Source: Cyanophora paradoxa CCMP329
Taxonomy: Eukaryota; Plantae; Glaucophyta
Reading direction: 5' to 3'
Assembly (NCBI GenBank): GCA_004431415.1
Contig: QPMI01000049.1
Coordinates: forward strand, 248,001-312,000
Length of the DNA: 64,000 nt
The notes under the pieces were generated by a model, which made no database searches, had not been told where the DNA came from, and saw only the letters and a list, made by a program, of their open reading frames with translations. Every line of letters starts with the position of its first letter. Within the stretch, counting starts at the first letter, position 1. A program made the position numbers and the translations under genes. Positions 17,464 to 31,981 of this stretch are shown here, piece by piece.

Positions 17464-19209
17464 CTAGAATTGGGAGGCATAGCCGTAGGGGCCAGGGGCG
17501 GGAGCGGGGGCGGGGGACGCCGCGACCGGGCCGCCGAGAAAGAAGAAGAGGGCGAACGCGTTGGAGAGGATCTCGAGCGAGAATGAGGCGAGGAGGAGGG
17601 CCGGCGCCGAGGCGAGGGACACGGCCGCGTAGCGGCGCGCGAAGTCCCCGTACGCCCACGCGACCGAGACCTGGTCAGATCAGATCAGATCAGATCAGGT
17701 CAGATCTGATCGGATCGGATCAGATCAGATGAGGACGGACCACGGTGGCGATGACTGCGGCGAAAATGCGGCGGAGGGTCGCCTGGTCGGCGCGCCAGCC
17801 GCCGACCAGCACGCACGCGTTCACCGCGATGATCAGGACGGCCGCCAGGCGGACGAAGAGCACCGTCGGCTGCGGGTCGACCCCATCGGTCCGAAGCTAA
17901 GTTGATACTATAGAATACTAGGATAGATAGATAGATAGATAGAGTAAAAGGTACTAGCTATAGGATAAACTAAGACGCTAGGATAGAATTGGAAGGGCGG
18001 ACGGCGAGCGTGTAGAGGGGCTCTGCGGCCGTCCCGACGAAGCCCGGCATGGCGAACTTGGCGTACTCCACGGGCCAGAGCAGCGCCACGAGCTTGACCA
18101 GCATCCAGAGGGCCGGCTTCGCGACGAGGAACACGACCTGGCCCCAGCGTTGGTGGGGGGCGGAGGGGCGGGGGGTACGGTGCCGGCGGCGCACGGTGAA
18201 GATGTCCCAGGGGCGCTTGGCGGGGGCCTGGGGCTGCACGGGGGCCTGCCCCGACCAGTAGCGCCAGCCGAAGAAGGCGGACAGGAGGAGCGTGAGCACG
18301 TGCATGAACAGGAAGAGCGCCGGGCCTGCGCGGCGGGGCGCGTCAATGGAAGTCACTGGAAAGGGTGGGGTGGGGGGGTACCGAAGGCGAAGGGGGGGTT
18401 GTACTTGTGGTGGAAGAGGCCGTAGGCGACGACCGTGACGAGGGCGCTGCCCGCGGAGATGAGGCCCAGCAGCAGCCCGGCGGTCTGCGGCGCGGGCGGG
18501 CGCGCGGGCGGGCGGGCGGTGGTCTCTCAGAAAGTCCCGAGGATGGCGCTTTCGAGGGGGTTGCGCGGCGGAGCGCACGCGGCCGTCGCCGGCGCTCACG
18601 GCGCGGCGGAGCGAGATGTAGAGCAAGGCGACCACCGACACGACTGAGCGCGGCGCGGGAGCGCGGTCGGTCGCCAAGAAGGGGGGCAGGATCTAGAGGG
18701 AGCGCGGCAGGCACAGAGCGCGCTGCGGGGCGTGCACGCACGGGCGATGCCATAGAGTTGCACGTTCAGCTCGTTCACTGCTCCGACGGCCGGACCGCGG
18801 TCAGCTTGAGCGCAAAGGCAGCGATCTAGATCTAGATCGATATCTAGATCTAGAGCTAGCCTGACCGGTCGGGCGGCCGGGGCCGGGCCGCCAGGGCGCG
18901 TACGCGGCTCATTGAGGATTCGGACGCACGTGGATCCCCGATGTAAACCTTCTCGTCCAGCCCCGGCGTCACGAAGTTCTCCGCCCACCAGGGCGCCAGG
19001 AGGAACCAAGAGCCCAGCGCGAAGAACCTGCGATCGGAGGCGTCAGCCGTTGCTAACGGCAGCCGCGGCGGTTACTAACTGCCGTCGCAGCCGTTAGCCT
19101 AGGCCGACCGCGCCGGCGCGGGCAGGCCGCCTCTATACTTTGATCGGTTCGGCGTGACGCACGCGATAGGACTGCAAAACAGAAAGTACACGTCGAAGAG
19201 GGATGCCAT
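17464..19209 (-). CDS. Unknown multi-pass membrane protein, family member A
   Basis: Spliced MASLFDVYFLFCSPIA/WFFALGSWFLLAPWWAENFVTPGLDEKVYIGDP/../WRYWSGQAPVQPQAP../..GPYGYASQF*. Most intron positions are shared with member B. Confidence 0.8.
17676..17730. repeat. Intronic (CAGAT/ATCTG)n pentamer repeat
   Basis: cagatcagatcagatcagatcaggtcagatctgatcggatcggatcagatcagat fills most of one intron. Confidence 0.85.
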
Positions 19210-19308: not shown

Positions 19309-21006
19309 ATGGCCGCCCTGAGGTTCTCGCTCTTCGACGTCTTTTACTTCTTCCTGAACCCTTTCGGGTGCGCCGATCGAAAGCCCGGCCGGCGAACCCG
19401 CGGCGAACCGCGGGCGGTTCAAAGTCGGTGGCCTAACCGCCCGGCCCGACTCCGCGACTGCCCAGATGGTTCGTCCTCGGGAGCTGGGCCCTTCTCGCGC
19501 CGTACTGGGCGGAATCTTTCTTCGCCCCGGGCCTGGATTCGAAGGTCTACGAGAACGACCCGGTTCGTCGAGGACCTGGCCAGGGACGCTTCGAAACTGC
19601 CCTAGAGACACGATAGAGTCGCGTACGCGCAAATCGGAGGCACCCTGCGGCGTGCTAGGCCGGCGTCCGGCCGCCGGACCCGTTCGACCGGCCTCGCGTC
19701 ACGGAGTTCCCGCCACGGCCGGTCAACGGGCCCCGCCGGCTGATCGACGTCGCGTTCTCGAATGCGCAGCTCAATGAGTTCGTCGTCAAGCACTACGCGC
19801 TCGCCCGTGCGCGGCTCGCCTTCGGCCCTCGGTCTCGTCCGCCGCTGACGGGCACGCCCCGCCCCGCCCCGCAGTCCTCGTCGTTATCGTCGTCTTCACC
19901 GTGACCCTTCGCCGCGCCGCCGCCGCCGGCGACGCCCGCGTGCGTCCCGCCGTCCCGCCCGCTTCCGGCTCCCCGCCGACGAGCCCGCCCGCACGCCCGC
20001 CCTCAGACCACCTCGGCCCTCCTCGCCGCCGTCGGCGTGGCCAGCGCCGTCGCGACCGGCATCGTCTACGGCCTCTTCCACCGCTCGTACAACCCCTCCC
20101 TCGCCGTCGGTGAGCACGCGTACCCCCCCCGCCTCGATATAGTACCCCCCTAACCGCCCGCAGGCCCCTGCCTCGTGCTCTTCAACCTCGTCCTCCACGC
20201 CGCCCTCTCCGCCTTCTTCATCTGGCGCTACTGGAGCGGCCAGGCCCCCGTGCAGCCCCAGCCGGCCGGCTCCCGCCCCAACGACGTCTACACCGTGCGC
20301 CGTACCCCCCTTGGCCTTCCGCCCCCCCCCTTCCCCTTCTGACTGGGCGCCAGATCTTCTTCATCTACGTCAAGCCCGCCCTGTGCGCCTCGAGCTCGAG
20401 CTCCCCCCTCGTACCCCCCCCGGGCCGCCGCTCACCTGAGCCTGACGCGCCTCAGGTGGATGATCGTGAACGCGATCGCCCTCGTCTGGCCCCGGCAGGT
20501 CCTCCAGTGGGCCGTCCCGGCCTTCCTCGGCACCACCGCCGCCCCCATCTACGAGAACCCGGTACCCCATTTCCTCCCTCCGGCCCGATCCCCGCCGTTT
20601 TTGTTCTGAGCCCCGCACCTCCGCCACTGTACAGGCGACGATCTGCTACTTCCGCGTGGGATCGATCCTGGCGCTCGCGGCCTCGGCGTGCGTGCCCCTC
20701 GGCCTCGCCCGCGCCGACGCGGACACCACCCGCCGCTCCTTCGTCGCCAAGACCGCCTTCCTGGTGCCGTACCCCCTCTTCCCATCCGATTCGAATAATT
20801 CGAACGTTTGTACCCCTCAGATCGCGCTGATCTGGAACTACGGGAACATGCTGCGGCGGTACCCCGTGGCGTCGCTCGCCTCGGCGCCCGTCGTCGTGCT
20901 CGCCCTCCTCGTCGCCGACGCCCTCTCCAACGCCGCCCTCCTCCACGCCTCCGGCGCCTCCAAGTCCGCCCCCGCCGCCGGGCCCGCCCCCTACGCCTAC
21001 GCCTAG
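19309..21006 (+). CDS. Unknown multi-pass membrane protein, family member B
   Basis: Spliced MAALRFSLFDVFYFFLNPF/GWFVLGSWALLAPYWAESFFAPGLDSKVYENDP/LNEFVVKHYALA/../FFIWRYWSGQAPVQPQP../..GPAPYAYA*; clearly paralogous to member A. Confidence 0.8.
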
Positions 21007-21109
21007 GCGCCCCGGGCCCCCGCCCCGGCCCTGTAGTTGTGCGCTCTCCCTAGGACTGCGCCTTGAATCGAATCGGAACGATTTTTCGGTCGCTGCGGCG
21101 TGTGCAATT
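19880..21109 (+). repeat. 1.2-kb direct segmental duplication, copy 1 (copy 2 at 29582-30838)
   Basis: Near-identical exons, introns and 3' flank from GTCGTTATCGTCGTCTTCAC to GTGCAATT. Confidence 0.92.
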
Positions 21110-21308
21110 TGTCGCATGGCCCAGTGGCCCAGTGGCCCCTGGTGGGGCTGGTCGATTTTCTGTATACGTAGCTTGGTCGGCCGCGCATAGGCAAGGCCTT
21201 GCGCAGGCAGGCAAGCACAGTGCAGCCGCTTCAACAGTAAGAGCTAGCTAGAGCTCTCGAGCTCCGAGGCTCGCAGATCTATCTAAATATCGACTCCACA
21301 CGCTCTGA

Positions 21309-24300
21309 TCAGCCTTGGCGCGTCGCCTTGGCGCGAGCGGCGCCCAGGCTCTCGATCTTCTTCCGGGCCCAATCCTCCCCGCAGGCTGCCTTCGCGTCGT
21401 CCGCGAGCATCGCCACCTGCCGATCCGGCGTTCACCACTACAGCGCTAGAAAAGGCTTGGAATTCTCCGCATGCGCACCATCTCGTCGAGAGTTTCTTTC
21501 ACAGTCTCGAGAGTGTGCACAGCGTCGAGGTGGCGGCTGCTCTCCTTGTCCGGCACCACGTGCGGCAGCTTGTCGAGGAGCTGGTGGTGCATGGCGCGGG
21601 CCGGCCGCATGAGCAGCAGCGTGCCGTTGAGAGGAAGGCGGCAGATCACTTGGAACCTATGAATCAAATCGGCGGATTAGAAGGCGGCAGACCGGAGAGG
21701 GGAAAGTTTCAAGATCGAATATTGATGTGATATTAGGGACCGTATATCGAAGCGGGCGCACGCTGGATCTTCGGAGGTGAGGCCGAAGGTGGTGGCGAAC
21801 CAGTCTTGCACCGCCTTCGCGTCCCACAAGAGAACCTGCGGACGCGAACTCCAGGTCAGCTGTCAGCGTTGAGAGCTTGCAATTGAGGCCGATCCTGATT
21901 TTGATCAGGAGCTCGAGGTACAATTTTTGCGCACGGAGGCAGGATCGAGGGAAGAGGGGGCAGCCGAGCTCGAGGCCGCGCCAGCAGCGCTAGCTGCAGC
22001 ATGCGTATGGGTCGCACGCGCAGTGGCCGCACTGGCAGGGGCCGCTGCAGCGGTTGCCTCCGGTGCCGGCACTCCGCTGTACATCTCCTTAGTGTCGGAT
22101 GAGACGTCATGATCATCCACAGCAGAGGGGGCAGCCGGCTTTGAAGCTGCGGAATTTGCTACGCGGACGACTTCGACGTCGACGGGTGCGGGGGCTGGCG
22201 CTGCGGGCGTCACGGCATTGACAGCGGCTGCAGGGGCCGGGCGGCCTGAGCCTGGTGCAGACGGAGGTGCCGGCACGTCGTGGGCAGCACGGCGTGCACG
22301 TGGGGCCGTTGCCGAAGCCGCAGCTGCGGCTGCAGGTGTAGGGGCCGCGGGGGCGCCGGCCGTGTACATGTGCACAGAGCTCGAGGCAGGAGCAGTGGTA
22401 CGGGCATGATGGCCATGGGCGGCCGCGGTCGCAGGGCCCTTCTGCTTCTGCATGTCGGCAGCGTCGACGTCGGCGTCGCCGCTGCGCCCAACAATCGGAT
22501 ATCAGCTCGAATAATGGCTCGAGGTGCTGCCCTATAGCTAGGCGTGGCCCAAGGGCACCGGTGCTGGAGCGATCGGGACGCGCTAGCGCTGTCCTTGGCG
22601 GGATCGATCGCGAGCCTCTGCTTCTTGGCGGGCGAAGGCGGCGTGGCCGTCCCGCTGCTGCTTTGCCTGTATGCACAAATATGTGGTCAGATTCCCGAAA
22701 ATGCCCGAGCGATCGACGATTTTTAAGAGACCCGCACCTTGCCCATGCTGCAGTCTTTTGCTTTGCGCTTGAGGTACTCGGAATTTCCGATCGCGAGGGG
22801 CCATGGTCATCGGCTTCATCTTTCTGTCGTGGATTCCGAATTTGAGAGTTCTGATCTTGGTCACCAGCGTATGACGAGCGGTCTTCGTCAAGTTCGAGGT
22901 CCACTCTAGTCCTGCAAAATGCAAATCCAACGCTGCGCTTCACGATAACAATATATAAACAAGCGATGCTGCCCACCTCAATGTTGTGTGAGCGGGAGAC
23001 CCTGCAGCTGCAGACCGCCCCGCGCTGGCTGTGAATGCGGAGTGCTGCGGATCTCCGCTCCTGCATGACCCTCAGCCAGGATCGCGATTGCAATCAGGCC
23101 TGTCAAAAATATGTATCGCGGTTTCTCGACCTTGAGGCGGGATTAATATTTGAGGAGGAATCCGCAGCGGTCTTCTGCCTCTTAGCGGGAGGCGTCGCGG
23201 TTGCGGTGCCGGCCGCGGCCGCCGTCGCGGGCGCGGGCGCGGTCGGGTGGCTGGAGCTTCCATGGCCAGCAAAAGCGGCGCCTGCGCTGCGAACGTTGCG
23301 GTTCCGAGATGTAGAGTCCACCGGAAGCTGCGAATTCGAAACGACTCAGAAAATTACATCGCTGCAGTAAAAAGATCACAGTGCACGTGCTACTTACTGT
23401 TTCGTTTTGGATGAATTCCACGGTCCTCTTCAGAGCGGCCACCGTCTCCGTTCTCCAGCGGGGATCGTTGTTGCCGATCTTGAGGCGCTCCTTCTTTGGA
23501 GCCCCGAACAACTTTACGAACCAAGGCTCCTTAACGTAATCTGGTGAGCCGCCAGCGACAGTCAATAGAATTCGAAAATGTATCAGTACATTATATAATT
23601 AGCACATGTACGTATACATGTACCTTCTACTTTGAAGTGGATCTTCATGCGATAGATCGTTTTCCCATTCGGTCCAAACCAGGCGACGCGGCAGCGGTCG
23701 GTGAACCGCAGGGCTTCTTCCACCGATGCAAGAGGCGGAGAAACCATCTGCGCGCACAATTATTTAATTGTATCACGTTCGTGTACGTGTACGGCTCATG
23801 ACCATGATCATGACCTTTCGAGAGTCGAGATTGAATGCTGCGTAGAATTTGGCGTTGAGTTCAACCACGCATCCGGCTTCGCGAACGATAATCGTCTGCG
23901 GACGATAGACTCTTCAAATTTAAACAACAATCAGACACTTAAACATCCAGTTAATTAATATTGCACCCGGCCACGATCAAACAATAGCTCCCAGCGTCGC
24001 TTCTGGAGTGCTTCTGGATATCGACGTGATAAAATTAACAACATCGATATCAGCAAGAACGACATATATATCGCGGTTGTCCGAACGTTTACGCACCCGC
24101 TTCTGAGTCACAACCCAAGAACTTTCCCGCACCATTTCCGCCGGAATCCGTGAGATCGTGATCACCACCTTCCTCGCCATCCCCGTCGTCTCCGTCGTCC
24201 TCGTCGGCATCGCCGGACCGACGCCTCGTCTGGCCCGTACGCGTCTGTTTATTTGGAGCTCTAAGTAATTGTACAAATGGCCGGTAAACCGAAGTAAGGA

Positions 24301-27300
24301 GACGCAACCGGACATGGACGCGCCGGAGCTGGCGCAACGCCCATGTCGAAAAGGAACTTGCGGACGTGCCAGGCAATGATTTTCGGATCGGTCGCCTCGG
24401 GCAGAGCCAGCCCCCCTCGCTCGAGCTCCTTGTAGAACTTCTCGTGCGCGTAATCTGTGATCGCGAATTGGTCGATCGCGTACAAGCTACTCACGCATTT
24501 GTGCATGCGCAATTAATTAATATTGCAGGTCCCATATGCATGCGTATGGCCGAATACTAATGCGCACCTGAGACTGGAAAACTCATGGAGCTAACATTCA
24601 GAGCTGGTTTGTAGTTTTGAGCTATGTCGATGTGCCTGCACACGAGTATGTGCCGATCACGCATTCGAGCGGCCTTCTGCACGCGTATACGTACGACCAA
24701 TCAGCAGTCGCGATCGGCGCAACGAATTTCGTAATTAAACGTTACCGTACCTCAAGCGTGTCATGATCAGAGACACGCCGCGTAGTAAACCGGAAGTCCC
24801 TCCAGTCGAAGTACCCTGGAAAGCCCCGTACACCTCTCCGAATCCCTTTGATGGTGTCGCGGACGGGCTCTTCAGGCAGGAACACATCAGCTAACTTAGA
24901 GGACAATTTATACTCTTGAGCTTCAAGCATATAAAAATTAAGACCAACCGTACCTGCATCTGATTCGGATTCATCCTCACTGCCGTCGCTATCATGATCG
25001 ATGGATTCATTGCTGTCGCTCTCGTCCGGCCGTGGATCCTCATCGCCTTCTGTCTCTGTCGTCCTCGAGCTCGTTGCCTTCTCGCTGATGCCGGCGCCGT
25101 CCTTCATCGTGCTGTCGCTCTATCCAAATGAATGAGTGAATTATATATATATATCATAAAATCCGTCATCATAATCATGGTCAATTTAAATTTCACTGAA
25201 ATGCACCACAGCAGCACGCAAGTTTCGCTGGTACGCATATGCACCGCGGTCGAACAGGAAGCTGCGAATTGCGCTCTTCAATTTCTTTACATCTTTTGAT
25301 CCTGCGGTGTACTCCTCCAGCTGACCAGCCTCCAGATCGGTGTAGAACAGCTCGCTCTCGTACGCTGTGCTGTATGCTCGAGCTCAAGAAACCTCGACCG
25401 GGCCAACTAAAAAACAGCGCTCACAAGACCGGCCGAATTTCAAAGCTGTGTTGGGGATGCACTCCGTGTCGGGCTGGCTCTCCCGTCTGTCAAGCCACTG
25501 GCAGCAGATGATTACGCGATCGCGAGACCGGGCCGCTTCCTAGTTGCGCGACAGGGAAAAAGAGCCGATCAGAGTTGCATATACAATGTGTCAATCTCAA
25601 TCTCAATGCCGATAATAGGGATTAGAATTACGTATACCTCTTCATCGAGGGAAGTGGCAGACGTGAAAGCTTTCCCCCGCCAACCAACGATGCGACCACG
25701 CCAGAAGCGCTCTCTGTATTTGGTGACACCTCCCCACGAGCGACGAGCGCGTTTCTGCAACAATCGCATTGGGAAATGATAATGAAAGGAAATTGATCAT
25801 GCGCGTGCAAATGAACTGCATACTTTGCGATCGCGAGATGAAACGGCGCCGCGGGACAGTAAAAACTGCCGGACGGCCTTGTGCGCGTTGTATCCACAAC
25901 CTTTCTTCTTCGAATTCATGAACTGGGCAAACTCGCCGTTGTGCAGATCGATCATGAACGGGGCGTCTGCGTAAGCTGCAAAAAGCAAATTTCCAAGTAC
26001 GGCGTGTTATGAGAATGGAAGACTTCGAAGCTTTATGAATTCGAAATCCGATCTCCACCTTCTTTTGGGAAGTTCAGCATATCGTCGGGGATGTGCTCTT
26101 CGTACGGCCGGCTCTCCAGCTCATCCAGACGCTGACAGGAGAGGATGATCGCGTCTCGCATTCGGGCAGCCTCCTGACAGTGCGCGTGCACGTGGGAAAT
26201 AATCAGCGGATTGCGGAATCATCGAAAGAGACCGCACCAGAGGGTTTCGAGTGCGGGGCACGTAGAGCCCTTTCCCACGCCAGGGCTTAAACACGCCGTC
26301 GAAGTCGTCAGATTTGGCCCGGTAGTACACGCCGCGAGGAAGAGGCCTCGCTGGTGCTACTAGTACTCCGTCGACGTCGACGTCGGAAGTTGGAGAGTCT
26401 CCTTGATCATGACTGCCCTCCTCGTCAACATCGTCCGTCTCCGGCATGCGCACTTCGAAACCATGCATATGCATGTGGCCGTGGTTGTCCGCGTCCCGGG
26501 AGTCCGCTCCTCCCTTCGAGGCATGTGCACGAACGCGCTGCGCTTTGTGAGCCATCACGCCAGCGAAACCCGCGGCCGCACCCCCAGCTTGGTTCACCTT
26601 GAACGGCTGCGGGCTGGCGGGTAGAGCGCCGCGCTGCGTGAGGAAGTGGCGGACGGCGTCGCGCAGCTCTTTCGGATCCGAGAGGCCCTCTAGCTCGGGC
26701 GCGAGCTGCCCGTTCTCCAGGTCGATGTAGAAAGCCTCCTTCTTGTAGTCTGCACACATGCATGCATACATATGCATGCGCAAGGTTGATATCGATCACG
26801 CGGCGCACGCGTGCAATTTAACGCGAATTCCGCAAATAAGCGCACCCTCTAGGTCATCTGGGCAGCTCATGATCATCTCTGCTGCAGGGGATCCGGAGGG
26901 CGATCCCTTGTGCCGATCCACCCACTGGAGCGCGAGAAGGAGCCTGTCCCGCATGCAAGCGACCTCCTGAGCGTCCACGAAAATTTTATTAAACAACTCC
27001 TTTCATCAGAAAGCGACAATTCTATATCTAGTGAAATCTTATGCAAACAAAAATCGGACCTTCGCATCCGGCAATGAATTGGTGATGATGGTCAGCCCGC
27101 GCCACTTCAGCTCGCCGCGATACGAGCCCGACTCGGAGGCGCGATAATGGACGCCCAAAAATCCTGAATAGGAATTCGAGGCCCGCCAGCGCCGGCGCCC
27201 TCCCTGCCCCGAGCTTCGCTTAGGTTTCTCTGGATCCGAATCCTCGCGTTCTGCTCACGTTGCATTACACAGAATCGATGATCCGCACCGCAAACGATTG

Positions 27301-28440
27301 GCACCTGAGGCAGAAGATTCTTCATCGTCGAGAGCTCTTAATCGCTCCTCGCCCTCTGCGCGCGATGGCATGGCAGTCAATCAAAATTTTAAATGTTGGG
27401 GAATATTTCAGTCGCTATAATTCCATGTAGGCGATCGCGTGCCAGATTTCTGGTTGGCCGGCGGCGTGGCCTCGCCATTGGCCGGCACCGCCGGCGCCTG
27501 CGAATGTGCGAAATTCATGCGCATCCGAAATGCACGACCGATATCGATGCCGTTCGAATTATCCGAAGGGCAAACCGAGCTCGAGGACTTGGCTTCCAGG
27601 TCCTGATCTGCGCCAGAGATCGCTAGTTATAATGCAGGGACAACGAGGGGAGATTTTGATTACGCTTGACCACGGACCGCCGCGAGCAGCGGCCGCGGCG
27701 CCCGTGTTGAGCTCACGGTCACCATGGCCTTGGCCTTCGGACGAGCTAAATGGTCCGGATCCGGAGGCTCCGGCTCTGCCGTGTTGCGATCGCATCTGCA
27801 CTCGTTTGATTTCCGAAATATGAATTGGACTCTCAACAACGAACGCTTGAGCAAGCGATGAGACGGACCGTTTTAAAGACGCGGTGAAGAGCGCTAAATT
27901 TGTCCTTCGCACGTAGGACGGGCTGAGGCTTCGAGGCCGTTATCATAATTAGCACCAAGACCTCTGAAGACCGAACGTAAAAAAATGAACCGAGCTCGAA
28001 GACCCGGCTCTACTGTCGCCAAGAGACGTCGACGCGCCGGATATCGATTCGCACGGTTTCTGTCAATATTGAATAGTCAAGAGGATCGCAAGTTCTGTAC
28101 ATGTGTAAAATATAGCTGAAACGCACAGCAGTGGATCCGGAGCCCTCGGAGAACTCGAAGATATTCTGGGGAGGCTGCGCGAAGAGCGAGTCCGGGCTCC
28201 AGGTTCGTGCGTTGGATTCGATTTCGAAGTCGAAGTTGATGTCATTTGAATTCAAGCGGACGTCTAGATCTGGTGTCAAGCTGGACGTCGACGCGCGGAC
28301 GTGCGCATGCGCAGATCCGGCTGAAAGCCCTGGTAGACCGCCTGGCGTGGAGCTCGAGCCGCTTCGAGTTTCCCTATGCATGTCGAGCTCGATCGCGATC
28401 TGCCGCCTCTAGACCTCGACCTGCCGAGGCTGAGGGTCAT
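21309..28440 (-). CDS. Large multi-exon protein: five divergent AP2/ERF-like repeats, Ala/Pro-rich linker, SAM-like C-terminal domain; 5' end uncertain (27371 to 28440)
   Basis: Repeats: FLGVHYR..YRGELKWRG../EVACMRD; RGVYYR..KPWRGK../EAARMRD..LNFPKE; WGGVTKY..WRGK../EAARSRD..LKF; IKGIRRG..DWRD../KAARMRD..MSFPVSDY; and ..EEALRFTDRCRVAWFGPNGKT... C-terminal WDAKAVQDWFATTFG..LNGTLLLM; stop TGA at 21309-21311. Confidence 0.7.
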
Positions 28441-29581: not shown

Positions 29582-30730
29582 GTCGTTATCGTCGTCTTCA
29601 CTGTTACCCTCCGCCGCGCCGCCGCCGCCGGCGACGCCCGCGTGCGTCCCGCCGTCCCGCCCGTCCCCGGCTCCCGGGTCCCCGCCGACGAGCCCGCCCG
29701 CCCGCCCGCGGCCGCCATCAGACCACCTCGGCCCTCCTCGCCGCCGTCGGCGTGGCGAGCGCCGTCGCGACCGGCATCGTCTACGGCCTCTTCCACCGCG
29801 CCTACAACCCCTCCCTCGCCGTCGGTGCGCACGCGTACCCCCCTCGCCTCGATATCGTACCCCCCGACCGCGCGCAGGCCCCTGCCTCGTGCTCTTCAAC
29901 CTCGTCCTCCACGCCGCCCTCTCCGCCTTCTTCATCTGGCGCTACTGGAGCGGCCAGGCCCCCGTGCAGCCCCAGCCGGCCGGCTCCCGCCCTAACGACA
30001 TCTACACCGTGCGCCCTACCCCCCTCGGCCTTCCGCCCCCCCCCCCCTCCTTCCCCTTCTGACTGGGCGCCAGATCTTCTTCATCTACGTCAAGCCCGCC
30101 CTGTGTGCCTCGAGCTCGAGCACCCCCCGTACCCCCCGCCGCTCACCTGAGCCTGACGCGCCTCAGGTGGATGATCGTGAACGCGATCGCCCTCGTCTGG
30201 CCCCGCCAGGTCCTCCAGTGGGCCGTCCCGGCCTTCCTCGGCACCACCGCCGCCCCCATCTACGAGAACCCGGTACCCCCTTTAATTTCCTCCCTCCCTC
30301 CCGATCCGCGCCGGTCCGTGCTGCTCTGAGCCCCGTACCCCCGACACGTGTACAGGCGACGATCTGCTACTTCCGCGTGGGATCGATCCTGGCGCTCGCG
30401 GCCTCGGCGTGCGTGCCCCTCGGCCTCGCCCGCGCTGACGCGGACACCACCCGCCGCTCCTTCGTCGCCAAGACCGCCTTCCTGGTGCCGTACCCCCTCT
30501 TCCCATCCGATTCGAATAATTCGAACGTTTGTACCCCTCAGATCGCGCTGATCTGGAACTACGGGAACATGCTGCGGCGGTACCCCGCGGCCTCGCTCGC
30601 CTCGGCGCCCGTCGTCGTGCTCGCCCTCCTCGTCGCCGACGCCCTGTCCAACGTCGCCCTCCTCCACGCCTCCGGCGCCTCCAAGTCCGCCCCCGCCGCC
30701 GCCGGGCCCGCCCCCTACGCCTACGCCTAG
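29582..30730 (+). pseudogene. 5'-truncated duplicate of membrane gene B (duplication continues to 30838)
   Basis: Starts mid-exon and lacks the first three exons, with an in-frame TAA just upstream. The retained exons are open, with few changes (RSY>RAY, DVY>DIY, PVA>PAA, NAA>NVA). Confidence 0.75.
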
Positions 30731-31981
30731 GCGCCCCGGGCCCCGGCCGCGGCCCGGCTCTGTAGTTGTGCGCTCTCCCTAGGACTGCGCCTTGAATCGA
30801 ATCGGAACGATTTGTCGGTCGCTGCGGCGTGTGCAATTCGTCCGCCCCTCCGGTCCGTCTCGAATCGAATCGATATCGAATCGGAACGCTTGCCTCGGCC
30901 CGCGGCCGGTGGCCGTCGCTTGCATCGGTCGCCGGGCCCCGGGGCCGCAGCACTAGCGCTGGCGTTGCCTTATATGCTCTTGGGGCCCCCGGGCCCCGCC
31001 CCGGACTAGCTATGTACAAGTATTTTATTTTCATGCTTATGTTGTTCTTGATCCCGGTACAAGTGATCTTTTAGATAATGGCGATACGTATACTATGATA
31101 TCTTAGCAGAAGATGATGAAAAAGGGCCTTGTTTTGAAGAATAGCTGGCCTGCCGAAGTGGCCCCCAGCGGTCCCACATGCTGTGGACAGGCTGTACATG
31201 TGCGTGTATATGTGCCGCCGCGGCCGGGCCGTGGCACCTGCGTCACGTGCACTGATCCCCGGGCCACCCCCTCCCCACTGGGCCACCCCCACCCCCTCTT
31301 CCCCCCTCTTTAATTTCCCCCGGCGTGGGTCCCGCCGGGGCCCACGGCCAGCTGTAGCTACAGCTCAGTGACTAGTACTTCCCCGAGTCCACCCGACCTT
31401 CAATTTAAGGCTTCACAGCTCTACGGGCCACGCACTGCGGCAGGGGCCAGACCCTGATCTCGAGCTCGAGCTCGAGGGCCCCTGGCCTGTTGCAATTGTG
31501 CATGCCAAATCAAACTTTTGAAATCAAGTTGCCATCATGGCATGCCATGATGACCATGACCAGCTGTCCCTTGAAGGAGTTGGATCCGACGATCCCCCGG
31601 GCCCCGGGTCCCAGCCTGGCCGCCGCACTGCGGCAGTGGCCGGGCCACCTGCACGGCCATGGCCACCATCATCAGCCTGACACCACGCGTACGTACGCAC
31701 TGGGGCCACTGGGCCAGGCCATGGGACCTATAGCTACAAGGCTGGCCCTCGGCCCGGCGGAAAACCATGGCTCCCCCACTCAGGCGAACCTCCCATATTG
31801 AGCGACCCATGGCCGGCACCTAGCTAGCACCCTCGGCTAGATAGATGACCGGTCGGAAGGGCACGTCACGTAGAACATTGATACATGTGCCGTGGTGTAT
31901 CAATGCGACGTCCACTTTTGCAAAAAAAAATGGCCCTCGGCCCGGCGGGTCAGCTGCCGAGTCAGTGCCGACGTCTTCTAG

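What the first reader, a model, noticed from the sequence alone, without database searches (positions are those of the whole stretch)
21309..28440. One gene with five divergent AP2-like repeats, each with a conserved ~45-aa extension, plus a SAM-like tail
Seen: the scattered minus-strand ORFs splice into one frame containing five modules. Each has G(V/I)..WR(G/D)..(E/K)AARxRD..(N/S/K)F..(D/A)Y, and repeats 1-4 then have xExFYxxLExGxL..D..(V/I)RxFLxxxG (e.g. DYKKEAFYIDLENGQL..DPKELRDAVRHFLTQRGA; AYESELFYTDLEAGQL..DVKKLKSAIRSFLFDRGA; DYAHEKFYKELERGGL..DPKIIAWHVRKFLFDMGV). Acidic linkers separate the modules and NLS-like PAKRQK/PAKKQR motifs follow. Established: AP2/ERF domains have (Y/F)RGV..EEAARAYD..NFP, plant AP2 factors carry one or two, and SAM domains oligomerise. 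Inference: a new multivalent, possibly polymerising DNA-binding family; I do not recognise the extension or the AP2x5+SAM architecture.
Basis: partly seen in the sequence, partly recalled or inferred. Interest (0 to 1): 0.8.

Follow-up and report, generated by a model that had tools for sequence, protein, structure and literature searches.

The report
Algal four-to-five-module AP2-like regulator gene
A heavily spliced gene of the freshwater alga Cyanophora paradoxa, broken up in the published annotation, encodes about 1,350 residues holding four clearly repeated three-exon modules (plus a doubtful fifth) that look like plant-type AP2 DNA-binding domains, each capped by a small helical domain; neither the AP2 and SAM identities nor expression could be tested here.

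Summary
The repeat architecture is real. On the minus strand, 25 GT-AG exons (27371 to 21309) join into one stop-free frame of about 1,351 codons. Mean intron length is about 85 nt, as published for Cyanophora paradoxa.

Modules 1-4 are significantly alike. They share two intron places: phase 0 before the E-A-A-R-x-R-D helix and phase 1 before the extension. Module 5 shares only the second intron place and loose motifs, and it scores like shuffled sequence.

The roughly 45-residue extension is encoded by its own exon. It folds with confidence (pLDDT 88) as a three-helix unit with no fold match.

AP2 and SAM identity rest on motif reading only. 

The only database counterpart is an 80-residue fragment from the published annotation (g14821.t1), whose predicted intron breaks my frame.

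This scan had already noted paralogues with the same layout elsewhere in this genome, including a six-module gene with a SAM tail. This locus is a further member of an apparently undescribed glaucophyte family, not a first sighting.

The parts
21309..27371 (-). Proposed gene: 25 exons, about 1,351 codons. Exons (high-low): 27371-27305, 27250-27060, 26966-26846, 26749-26238, 26173-26059, 25975-25824, 25754-25638, 25539-25425, 25364-25210, 25119-24954, 24890-24751, 24676-24568, 24454-24309, 24244-24097, 24013-23967, 23895-23815, 23747-23624, 23540-23398, 23327-23131, 22911-22738, 22666-22559, 22481-21935, 21835-21741, 21656-21479, 21416-21309.
   Evidence: All junctions are GT-AG. The joined frame has no stop, against 30 and 41 stops in the other frames. 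Exon GC is 0.61 and intron GC 0.45. Introns are 54-113 nt (one of 219), mean about 85 nt, against the published mean of 86 bp.
26610..27179 (-). Module 1: sheet-like half 27179-27060, helix exon 26966-26846, extension 26749-26610.
   Evidence: Alignments A1-A3 and A7. Revising the acceptor to 26967 puts the intron at the same place and phase as in modules 2-4.
25824..26363 (-). Module 2: sheet-like half 26363-26238, helix exon 26173-26059 (ends in L-N-F-P), extension 25975-25824.
   Evidence: Helix exon against that of module 3: tblastn E 2.5e-8. Of all modules it has the spacing closest to AP2/ERF, by my own reading.
25210..25754 (-). Module 3: sheet-like half 25754-25638, preceded by a K-K-R-A-R-R basic stretch; helix exon 25539-25425; extension 25364-25210.
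   Evidence: Extension against that of module 1: E 1.4e-9, z 20.
24309..24888 (-). Module 4: sheet-like half 24888-24751, helix exon 24676-24568, extension 24454-24309.
   Evidence: Extension against that of module 1: E 1.8e-6. Helix exon against that of module 2: E 0.002.
23398..23895 (-). Doubtful module 5: 23895-23815, 23747-23624, 23540-23398.
   Evidence: It shares only the phase-1 intron before D-Y and loose motifs (E-E-A-L-R, H-F, D-Y). Pairwise z is below 3, and it scores 3-4 bits against the profile of modules 1-4, the same as shuffles.
21935..23327 (-). Low-complexity linker region (exons 19-22): Ala/Pro/Ser-rich, with two NLS-like motifs near 23192-23172 and 22633-22615. Exon 20 (22911-22738) could be skipped without changing the frame.
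   Evidence: Translations. Exon 20 has a low GC3 of 0.44, and no database model holds exon 20 or exon 22.
21309..21835 (-). C-terminal helical tail read as SAM-like (exons 23-25). An alternative stop at 21448-21446 applies if intron 24 is retained.
   Evidence: Motif reading only (W-x3-V-x2-W-F, then N-G-T-L-L-L). Pfam and Atlas searches of the pieces were blank. Exon 25 has GC3 0.86.
26352..26775 (-). Published gene model tig00000194_g14821.t1 (P0001, 80 aa). It starts inside my intron 3 and uses a 169-nt intron (26581-26413) that shifts the frame to a stop.
   Evidence: The coordinates are inferred by laying the P0001 sequence.

Best explanation
This is one nuclear protein-coding gene of Cyanophora paradoxa. 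It belongs to a lineage-specific family of modular regulators.

A three-exon cassette was duplicated in tandem to give four clear modules and possibly a decayed or unrelated fifth. The cassette is: a basic arm plus a sheet-like half; then the E-A-A-R-x-R-D helix running to an N-F-P-like end; then a three-helix cap.

Inferred steps:
- Each module core is a very diverged AP2/ERF-type DNA-binding domain.
- The three-helix cap stabilises or extends that core.
- The acidic linkers and Ala/Pro-rich stretches are flexible spacers or effector regions.
- Basic motifs import the protein into the nucleus.
- The C-terminal helical tail mediates self-association.
- Together these would let the protein bind several DNA sites at once and perhaps oligomerise on chromatin.

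Shown here: the splice-consistent frame, the repeat homology of modules 1-4, the shared intron places, and the confident three-helix fold of the cap. AP2 identity, SAM identity, DNA binding, oligomerisation and expression are inferred, not shown.
For: - One open frame runs through 25 GT-AG exons, while the other two frames hold 30 and 41 stops.
- Intron sizes match the published mean for this genome.
- Modules 1-4 are mutually significant.
- Intron place and phase are identical in modules 1-4 before the helix, and in all five modules before the extension.
- The extension folds alone at pLDDT 88.4, pTM 0.64, as three helices.
- In module 2, the distance from R-G-V to E-A-A-R (about 33 residues) and the closing L-N-F-P agree with the AP2/ERF consensus as I know it. 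This is my own knowledge, not a tool result.
- The organism is confirmed by the EukProt name of the one database hit.
- Earlier scan notes report paralogues with the same layout. These are leads only.
Against: - No exon piece matches Pfam AP2 or SAM at E up to 1.
- Profiles of the half-domains and single exons find no AP2 structure in the PDB.
- The sheet-like half alone folds at only pLDDT 51.
- Atlas feature searches gave nothing for the tail and only weak TonB-like fragments for exon 17.
- Module 5 is not statistically related to modules 1-4.
- The published model g14821.t1 uses an intron with a good donor (GTGCGG) that would end translation after module 1.
- There is no RNA evidence.
- Exons 1 and 20 have low GC3.
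Confidence: 0.55

Rival explanations
1. The gene and its repeats are real, but the module is not an AP2-type DNA binder. It would be a glaucophyte-specific repeat of another fold, for example a protein-protein or RNA-binding unit, and the likeness to AP2 motifs would be coincidence.
For: All sequence and profile tests for AP2 on the pieces were blank. The W-L-G-T-F strand motif of AP2 is absent. The half-domain model is of low confidence. The only confident structure is helical.
Against: Each domain is split by an intron, so blank half-domain searches have little weight. The order sheet-like half, then helix, then N-F-P end, and its spacing, fit AP2. Basic arms precede the cores and NLS-like motifs are present. 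Earlier scan notes on paralogues report AP2-like predicted folds, unchecked here.
Confidence: 0.25
2. The locus is not one functional gene. It would be two or more genes, or a transcript that is normally truncated after module 1, as in the published model. The long joined frame would then be a relic or only a rare isoform.
For: The only database protein here is an 80-residue model whose 169-nt intron shifts the frame to a stop. No models holding exon 20 or exon 22 were found within the length ranges searched. There is no transcript evidence.
Against: A frame of 1,326-1,351 codons with no stop, kept across 24 splice junctions, is very unlikely without selection. Exon 4 stays open for 170 codons across the disputed intron. 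The authors themselves state that these Augustus models need manual curation. The model starts inside an intron, which suggests an ab initio call without junction hints.
Confidence: 0.15
3. The gene is cargo or a remnant of a mobile or recently inserted segment, not an old host regulator. It sits in a low-GC island between two 1.25-kb direct repeats.
For: The direct repeats 19880-21113 and 29582-30842 are 93% identical. GC is 47-60% in the gene against about 70% in the flanks and a genome mean of 67.6%. Earlier scan notes link AP2-like domains to Fanzor2 elements in this genome; these are leads only.
Against: The repeats have no TG..CA ends and no target-site duplication. There is no transposase, integrase or reverse transcriptase signal in the interval. 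Twenty-four introns argue against a retroelement. No other copy of the interval lies in the window.
Confidence: 0.05

Closest known systems
Plant AP2/ERF superfamily (Pfam PF00847), AP2 subfamily with two tandem domains
   Same: The order of elements is the same: basic start with G-V, a sheet-like stretch, an E-A-A-R-type helix, and an N-F-P-like end. Module 2 has similar spacing. The domains are arranged in tandem within one nuclear-looking protein.
   Different: There is no profile match on any piece. The W-L-G-T-F strand motif is missing, A-Y-D is replaced by (M/S)-R-D, and W-R-G is invariant instead. There are four to five copies, each followed by its own three-helix exon. The fold was not verified here.
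ApiAP2 proteins of apicomplexans and relatives (one to several AP2 domains in long low-complexity proteins)
   Same: Several diverged AP2-like domains are spread along a long protein rich in low-complexity linkers, and the family is expanded in one lineage.
   Different: ApiAP2 domains are found by Pfam AP2, and these are not. No ACDC domain was hit. A per-module helical cap and a SAM-like tail are not, to my knowledge, ApiAP2 features.
SAM/Pointed-domain transcription factors (TEL/Yan, LEAFY N-terminal domain, polyhomeotic)
   Same: If the tail is a SAM domain, it would pair a sequence-specific DNA binder with a head-to-tail polymerising module.
   Different: Those factors pair SAM with ETS, LEAFY or other DNA-binding domains, not with AP2-like ones. 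Here the SAM assignment rests on a few motif positions only.
Arm-binding (AP2-like) domain plus 'SAM-like' helical core-binding domain of lambda-type tyrosine integrases
   Same: A sheet-plus-helix DNA binder is followed directly by a helical domain.
   Different: There is no catalytic recombinase domain and no Pfam hit to the integrase N-terminal families on any extension exon. The cap is only about 45 residues. This is a resemblance from memory, not a test.
Paralogues noted earlier in this scan in the same genome (six-module plus SAM gene; six-module plus HMG gene; three-module giant gene)
   Same: The same alga, the same kind of intron-conserved AP2-like modules, and in some a SAM-like C-terminus.
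   Different: Module number and the added domains differ.

Membership tests
AP2/ERF domain (PF00847) | Match to the family profile over the domain of about 60 residues | tested here: inconclusive
   No hit at E up to 1 on any stop-free piece. Every domain is cut by an intron, so only halves could be scanned, and the joined model was not searched.
AP2/ERF domain (PF00847) | Three-stranded antiparallel sheet packed against a C-terminal helix | tested here: inconclusive
   The sheet-like half of module 2, folded with 4 aligned rows, gave strands at 6-8, 12-17 and 20-22 but pLDDT 50.7. The whole module could not be folded.
AP2/ERF domain (PF00847) | Hallmark motifs and spacing (R-G-V start, E-E-A-A-R-A-Y-D helix, L-N-F-P end) | tested here: inconclusive
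   From reading: R-G-V, E-A-A-R-M-R-D and L-N-F-P are present in module 2 with AP2-like spacing. The other modules fit less well, and W-L-G-T-F is absent in all. The consensus is taken from my own knowledge.
AP2/ERF domain (PF00847) | Similarity to solved AP2 structures by sequence | tested here: not met
   Profiles of the helix exons and of the sheet-like halves, and the single exons 5 and 17, found no AP2 chain at E up to 10. These were half-domains only.
AP2/ERF domain (PF00847) | Sequence-specific DNA binding | not testable with these tools
   This needs DAP-seq, protein-binding microarrays or EMSA with recombinant modules.
SAM domain (PF00536, PF07647, PF02198) | Match to a SAM profile | tested here: inconclusive
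   There was no family at E up to 1 on the two pieces 21680-21862 and 21449-21676, and the Atlas feature search of exon 24 gave no usable hit. An intron splits the domain.
SAM domain (PF00536, PF07647, PF02198) | Five-helix bundle | not tested
SAM domain (PF00536, PF07647, PF02198) | Self-association or polymerisation | not testable with these tools
   This needs SEC-MALS, analytical ultracentrifugation or a two-hybrid assay of the tail.
ApiAP2 with ACDC domain | Pfam AP2 plus the AP2-coincident C-terminal domain | tested here: not met
   Neither family was hit on any piece.
Cyanophora AP2-like module family of earlier scan notes | Intron-conserved module repeated in tandem, with an optional SAM-like tail, in this alga | tested here: met
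   The architecture and shared intron phases are shown here. Direct sequence comparison with the paralogues was not possible.

The most novel reading that the evidence does not exclude
Glaucophytes may have evolved their own combinatorial DNA-reading system. A three-exon cassette encoding an AP2-derived core plus a three-helix cap would be shuffled and duplicated to build arrays of four to six readers. These arrays would be joined to SAM, HMG or chromodomain effectors. In function the system would resemble zinc-finger arrays, but it would be built from a sheet-type domain, and the cap would be a new fold element that sets the spacing or cooperativity between neighbouring readers.
Probability: 0.2. 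Interest if true: 0.75.

Novelty: new variant of a known kind. Interest (0 to 1): 0.45.

Why it matters
If the modules are AP2-type DNA binders, this family shows that tandem arrays of four to six such domains arose independently in the third, little-studied branch of the plant supergroup. Each domain would carry an added helical cap, and the whole array would be joined to a self-association tail. That bears on how AP2 domains became the main regulators in plants and apicomplexans, and it would offer a natural multivalent DNA-binding scaffold.

There is also a practical point. The published Cyanophora annotation misses this gene almost entirely, so surveys of transcription factors in this model alga probably under-count such proteins.

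Tried and rejected
- **Pfam on 20 stop-free pieces:** nothing relevant.
- **Word-indexed protein search:** exon 4 (94-298 aa), exon 20 inside its 326-aa open stretch (179-570 aa) and exon 22 (109-346 aa) all came back blank. The length limits mean that a long model of this gene or of paralogues could not be reached.
- **Full HMMER pass with exon 4 over 1.84 billion proteins:** only the 80-aa annotation fragment. It was not on record in the contig index.
- **Metagenome and viral scans:** patterns from the extension and the helix exon found no relatives.
- **PDB:** half-domain profiles and single exons found no AP2.
- **Phage tblastn with exon 5:** chance hits only.
- **Atlas feature searches:** nothing for exon 24, and weak TonB-like fragments for exon 17, which I take as chance.
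- **Fold searches with the extension model:** Foldseek best E 4, VIA best Z 3.7, Atlas generic helical pieces.
- **Mixed alignment of exon 4 with the other halves:** misaligned and not used.
- **LTR reading of the flanking repeats:** rejected, since they have no TG..CA ends and no target duplication, and the gene is full of introns.
- **Joined spliced protein:** It was joined only inside local scripts, to count stops and to test module 5 against a profile of modules 1-4.
Full report
**What is there**

The interval lies in a dip of G+C, at 47-60% against about 70% in the flanks. It holds no long ORF on either strand. Reading the three minus-strand frames against the sequence, I could join the coding-looking stretches through canonical GT-AG introns.

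A script working from coordinates alone confirmed the model:
- Every junction is GT-AG.
- The phases fit.
- The frame is open from the ATG at 27371 onwards.

I made two revisions.
- Moving the acceptor of intron 2 to 26967 gives a CAG acceptor and a 93-nt intron. It also places the intron directly before the helix motif, as in modules 2-4.
Its donor GTGCGC lies at 21478, the intron is 62 nt, and the exon spans 21416-21309 with GC3 0.86.

The model then has 25 exons and about 1,351 codons. The joined frame has no stop, while the other two frames have 30 and 41. Exon G+C is 0.61 and intron G+C 0.45. Introns measure 54-113 nt (one of 219), with a mean of about 85.

**Organism and annotation**

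One HMMER pass with exon 4 over 1.84 billion proteins gave a single hit. It is an 80-residue protein, 100% identical to the first 55 residues of the exon. The hit is EukProt EP00741, Cyanophora paradoxa, model tig00000194_g14821.t1. This confirms the organism named in earlier scan notes.

That model starts inside my intron 3. It then uses a 169-nt GT-AG intron (26581-26413) that shifts the frame into a stop. The rest of exon 4 is in no database protein.

The genome paper (PMC6704402) states that:
- the genes were predicted with BRAKER1/Augustus;
- there is a mean of 9.2 introns per gene, with a mean length of 86 bp;
- such structures are hard for predictors and the models need manual curation.

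My intron sizes fit this genome, and a fragmentary published model is no surprise. Still, the disputed intron has a good donor. Without RNA data I cannot exclude that it is used.

**The repeats**

I aligned the three exon classes separately by reference. Shuffle tests and tblastn within the window show that modules 1-4 are homologous:
- extension exons: z 3-20, E down to 1.4e-9;
- helix exons: z 4-18, E down to 2.5e-8;
- sheet-like halves: weakly alike, with G, G, W and R invariant.

Modules 1-4 share a phase-0 intron directly before the (E/K)-(A/V)-A-(R/C)-x-R-D helix. All five modules share a phase-1 intron before the Y that opens the extension. This is the footprint of tandem duplication of a three-exon cassette.

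Module 5 has the second intron and loose motifs only. Pairwise z is below 3. Against a local profile of whole modules 1-4 it scores 3-4 bits, the same as 2,000 shuffles. I therefore count four certain modules and one doubtful.

No further copy lies elsewhere in the 64-kb window.

**The extension**

Folded alone with the five-row alignment, the extension of module 1 gives pLDDT 88.4 and pTM 0.64. It has three helices, at residues 5-11, 16-19 and 25-38. It is a compact helical unit encoded by its own exon. Fold searches found nothing specific:
- Foldseek: best E 4;
- VIA-align: best Z 3.7;
- Atlas: generic helical pieces.

For 46 residues this shows neither novelty nor kinship.

**AP2 and SAM**

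Every putative domain is cut by an intron, so only halves have a reference. I left out any search or fold of the joined protein.

The halves gave nothing:
- no Pfam family at E up to 1;
- no AP2 chain in the PDB with profiles or single exons;
- a low-confidence model of the sheet-like half, pLDDT 51, with three short strands;
- no usable Atlas hit for exon 24, the main exon of the tail;
- weak TonB-like fragments for exon 17, which I take as chance.

What remains is reading against consensus patterns that I know from memory.
- In module 2, R-G-V lies about 33 residues before E-A-A-R-M-R-D and the module core ends in L-N-F-P. This fits the AP2/ERF consensus, but the W-L-G-T-F strand motif is absent.
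- In the tail, W-x3-V-x2-W-F followed by N-G-T-L-L-L fits the first and third helices of SAM domains.

These are leads, not tests. I put the AP2 fold at roughly 60% and the SAM fold at roughly 40%.

**Relatives**

None was found outside this locus, but the searches were weak.
- The word-indexed search is limited by length.
- The pattern scans of metagenome and viral contigs found no confirmed match.
- The single full HMMER pass used only exon 4.

No paper in the held library contains both 'AP2 domain' and 'sterile alpha motif'. Searches on Cyanophora or glaucophyte AP2 factors gave nothing on such proteins.

Earlier notes of this scan describe paralogues on other pieces of the same genome:
- a six-module gene with a SAM tail;
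- a six-module gene with an HMG box;
- a three-module giant gene.

The scan has therefore found this family before. I could not obtain those sequences, so I did not check those notes beyond the shared architecture.

**Expression**

**Surroundings**

The gene lies between two direct copies of a 1.25-kb stretch, 19880-21113 and 29582-30842, which are 93% identical. They have no TG..CA ends and no target duplication. They look like a partial duplicate of a neighbouring GC-rich gene rather than terminal repeats of an element.

**Verdict**

This is a real and probably intact gene, missed by the annotation. It encodes a modular protein with four clear AP2-like-plus-cap modules, linkers, NLS-like motifs and a helical tail.

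It most likely works as a multivalent nuclear DNA-binding regulator (confidence 0.55). Its fold assignments, binding and expression remain to be shown.

Noticed in passing
window 19880-21113 and 29582-30842 (also 18187-18611, inverted, about 74%): A 1.25-kb direct repeat, 93% identical and about 9.71 kb apart, brackets the whole gene. It has no TG..CA ends and no target-site duplication, and looks like a partial duplicate of a GC-rich plus-strand gene.
   Followed up: partly
window 26352-26775, minus strand: The published model tig00000194_g14821.t1 (80 aa) starts inside an intron and ends through a frame-shifting 169-nt intron. The published proteome therefore lacks this roughly 1,350-residue protein.
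   Followed up: yes
window 23500-26000: G+C falls to 47-55% over the gene, against about 70% in the flanks and the published genome mean of 67.6%. GC3 of the exons is only 0.44-0.86.
   Followed up: partly
window 24953-24891, minus strand (intron 10): This 63-nt intron is in frame and free of stops, so retaining it would add 21 residues to the acidic linker instead of breaking the protein.
   Followed up: no
window 22911-22738, minus strand (exon 20): The exon is 174 nt long, a multiple of three, and lies between two phase-2 junctions, so it could be skipped without changing the frame. Its GC3 is low (0.44), and the intron before it is unusually long (219 nt) and may hide another small exon.
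   Followed up: no
window 27411-28408, minus strand: Ser-rich, coding-looking stop-free stretches lie upstream of the ATG at 27371, some with plausible GT-AG links between them.
   Followed up: partly
window 25830-25740, minus strand (junction of exons 6 and 7): The strongest classical NLS-like stretch (K-K-R-A-R-R) lies directly before the core of module 3, and a G-R-R-R-W-R stretch lies before module 1. These basic arms sit where AP2 domains have their N-terminal arm.
   Followed up: no
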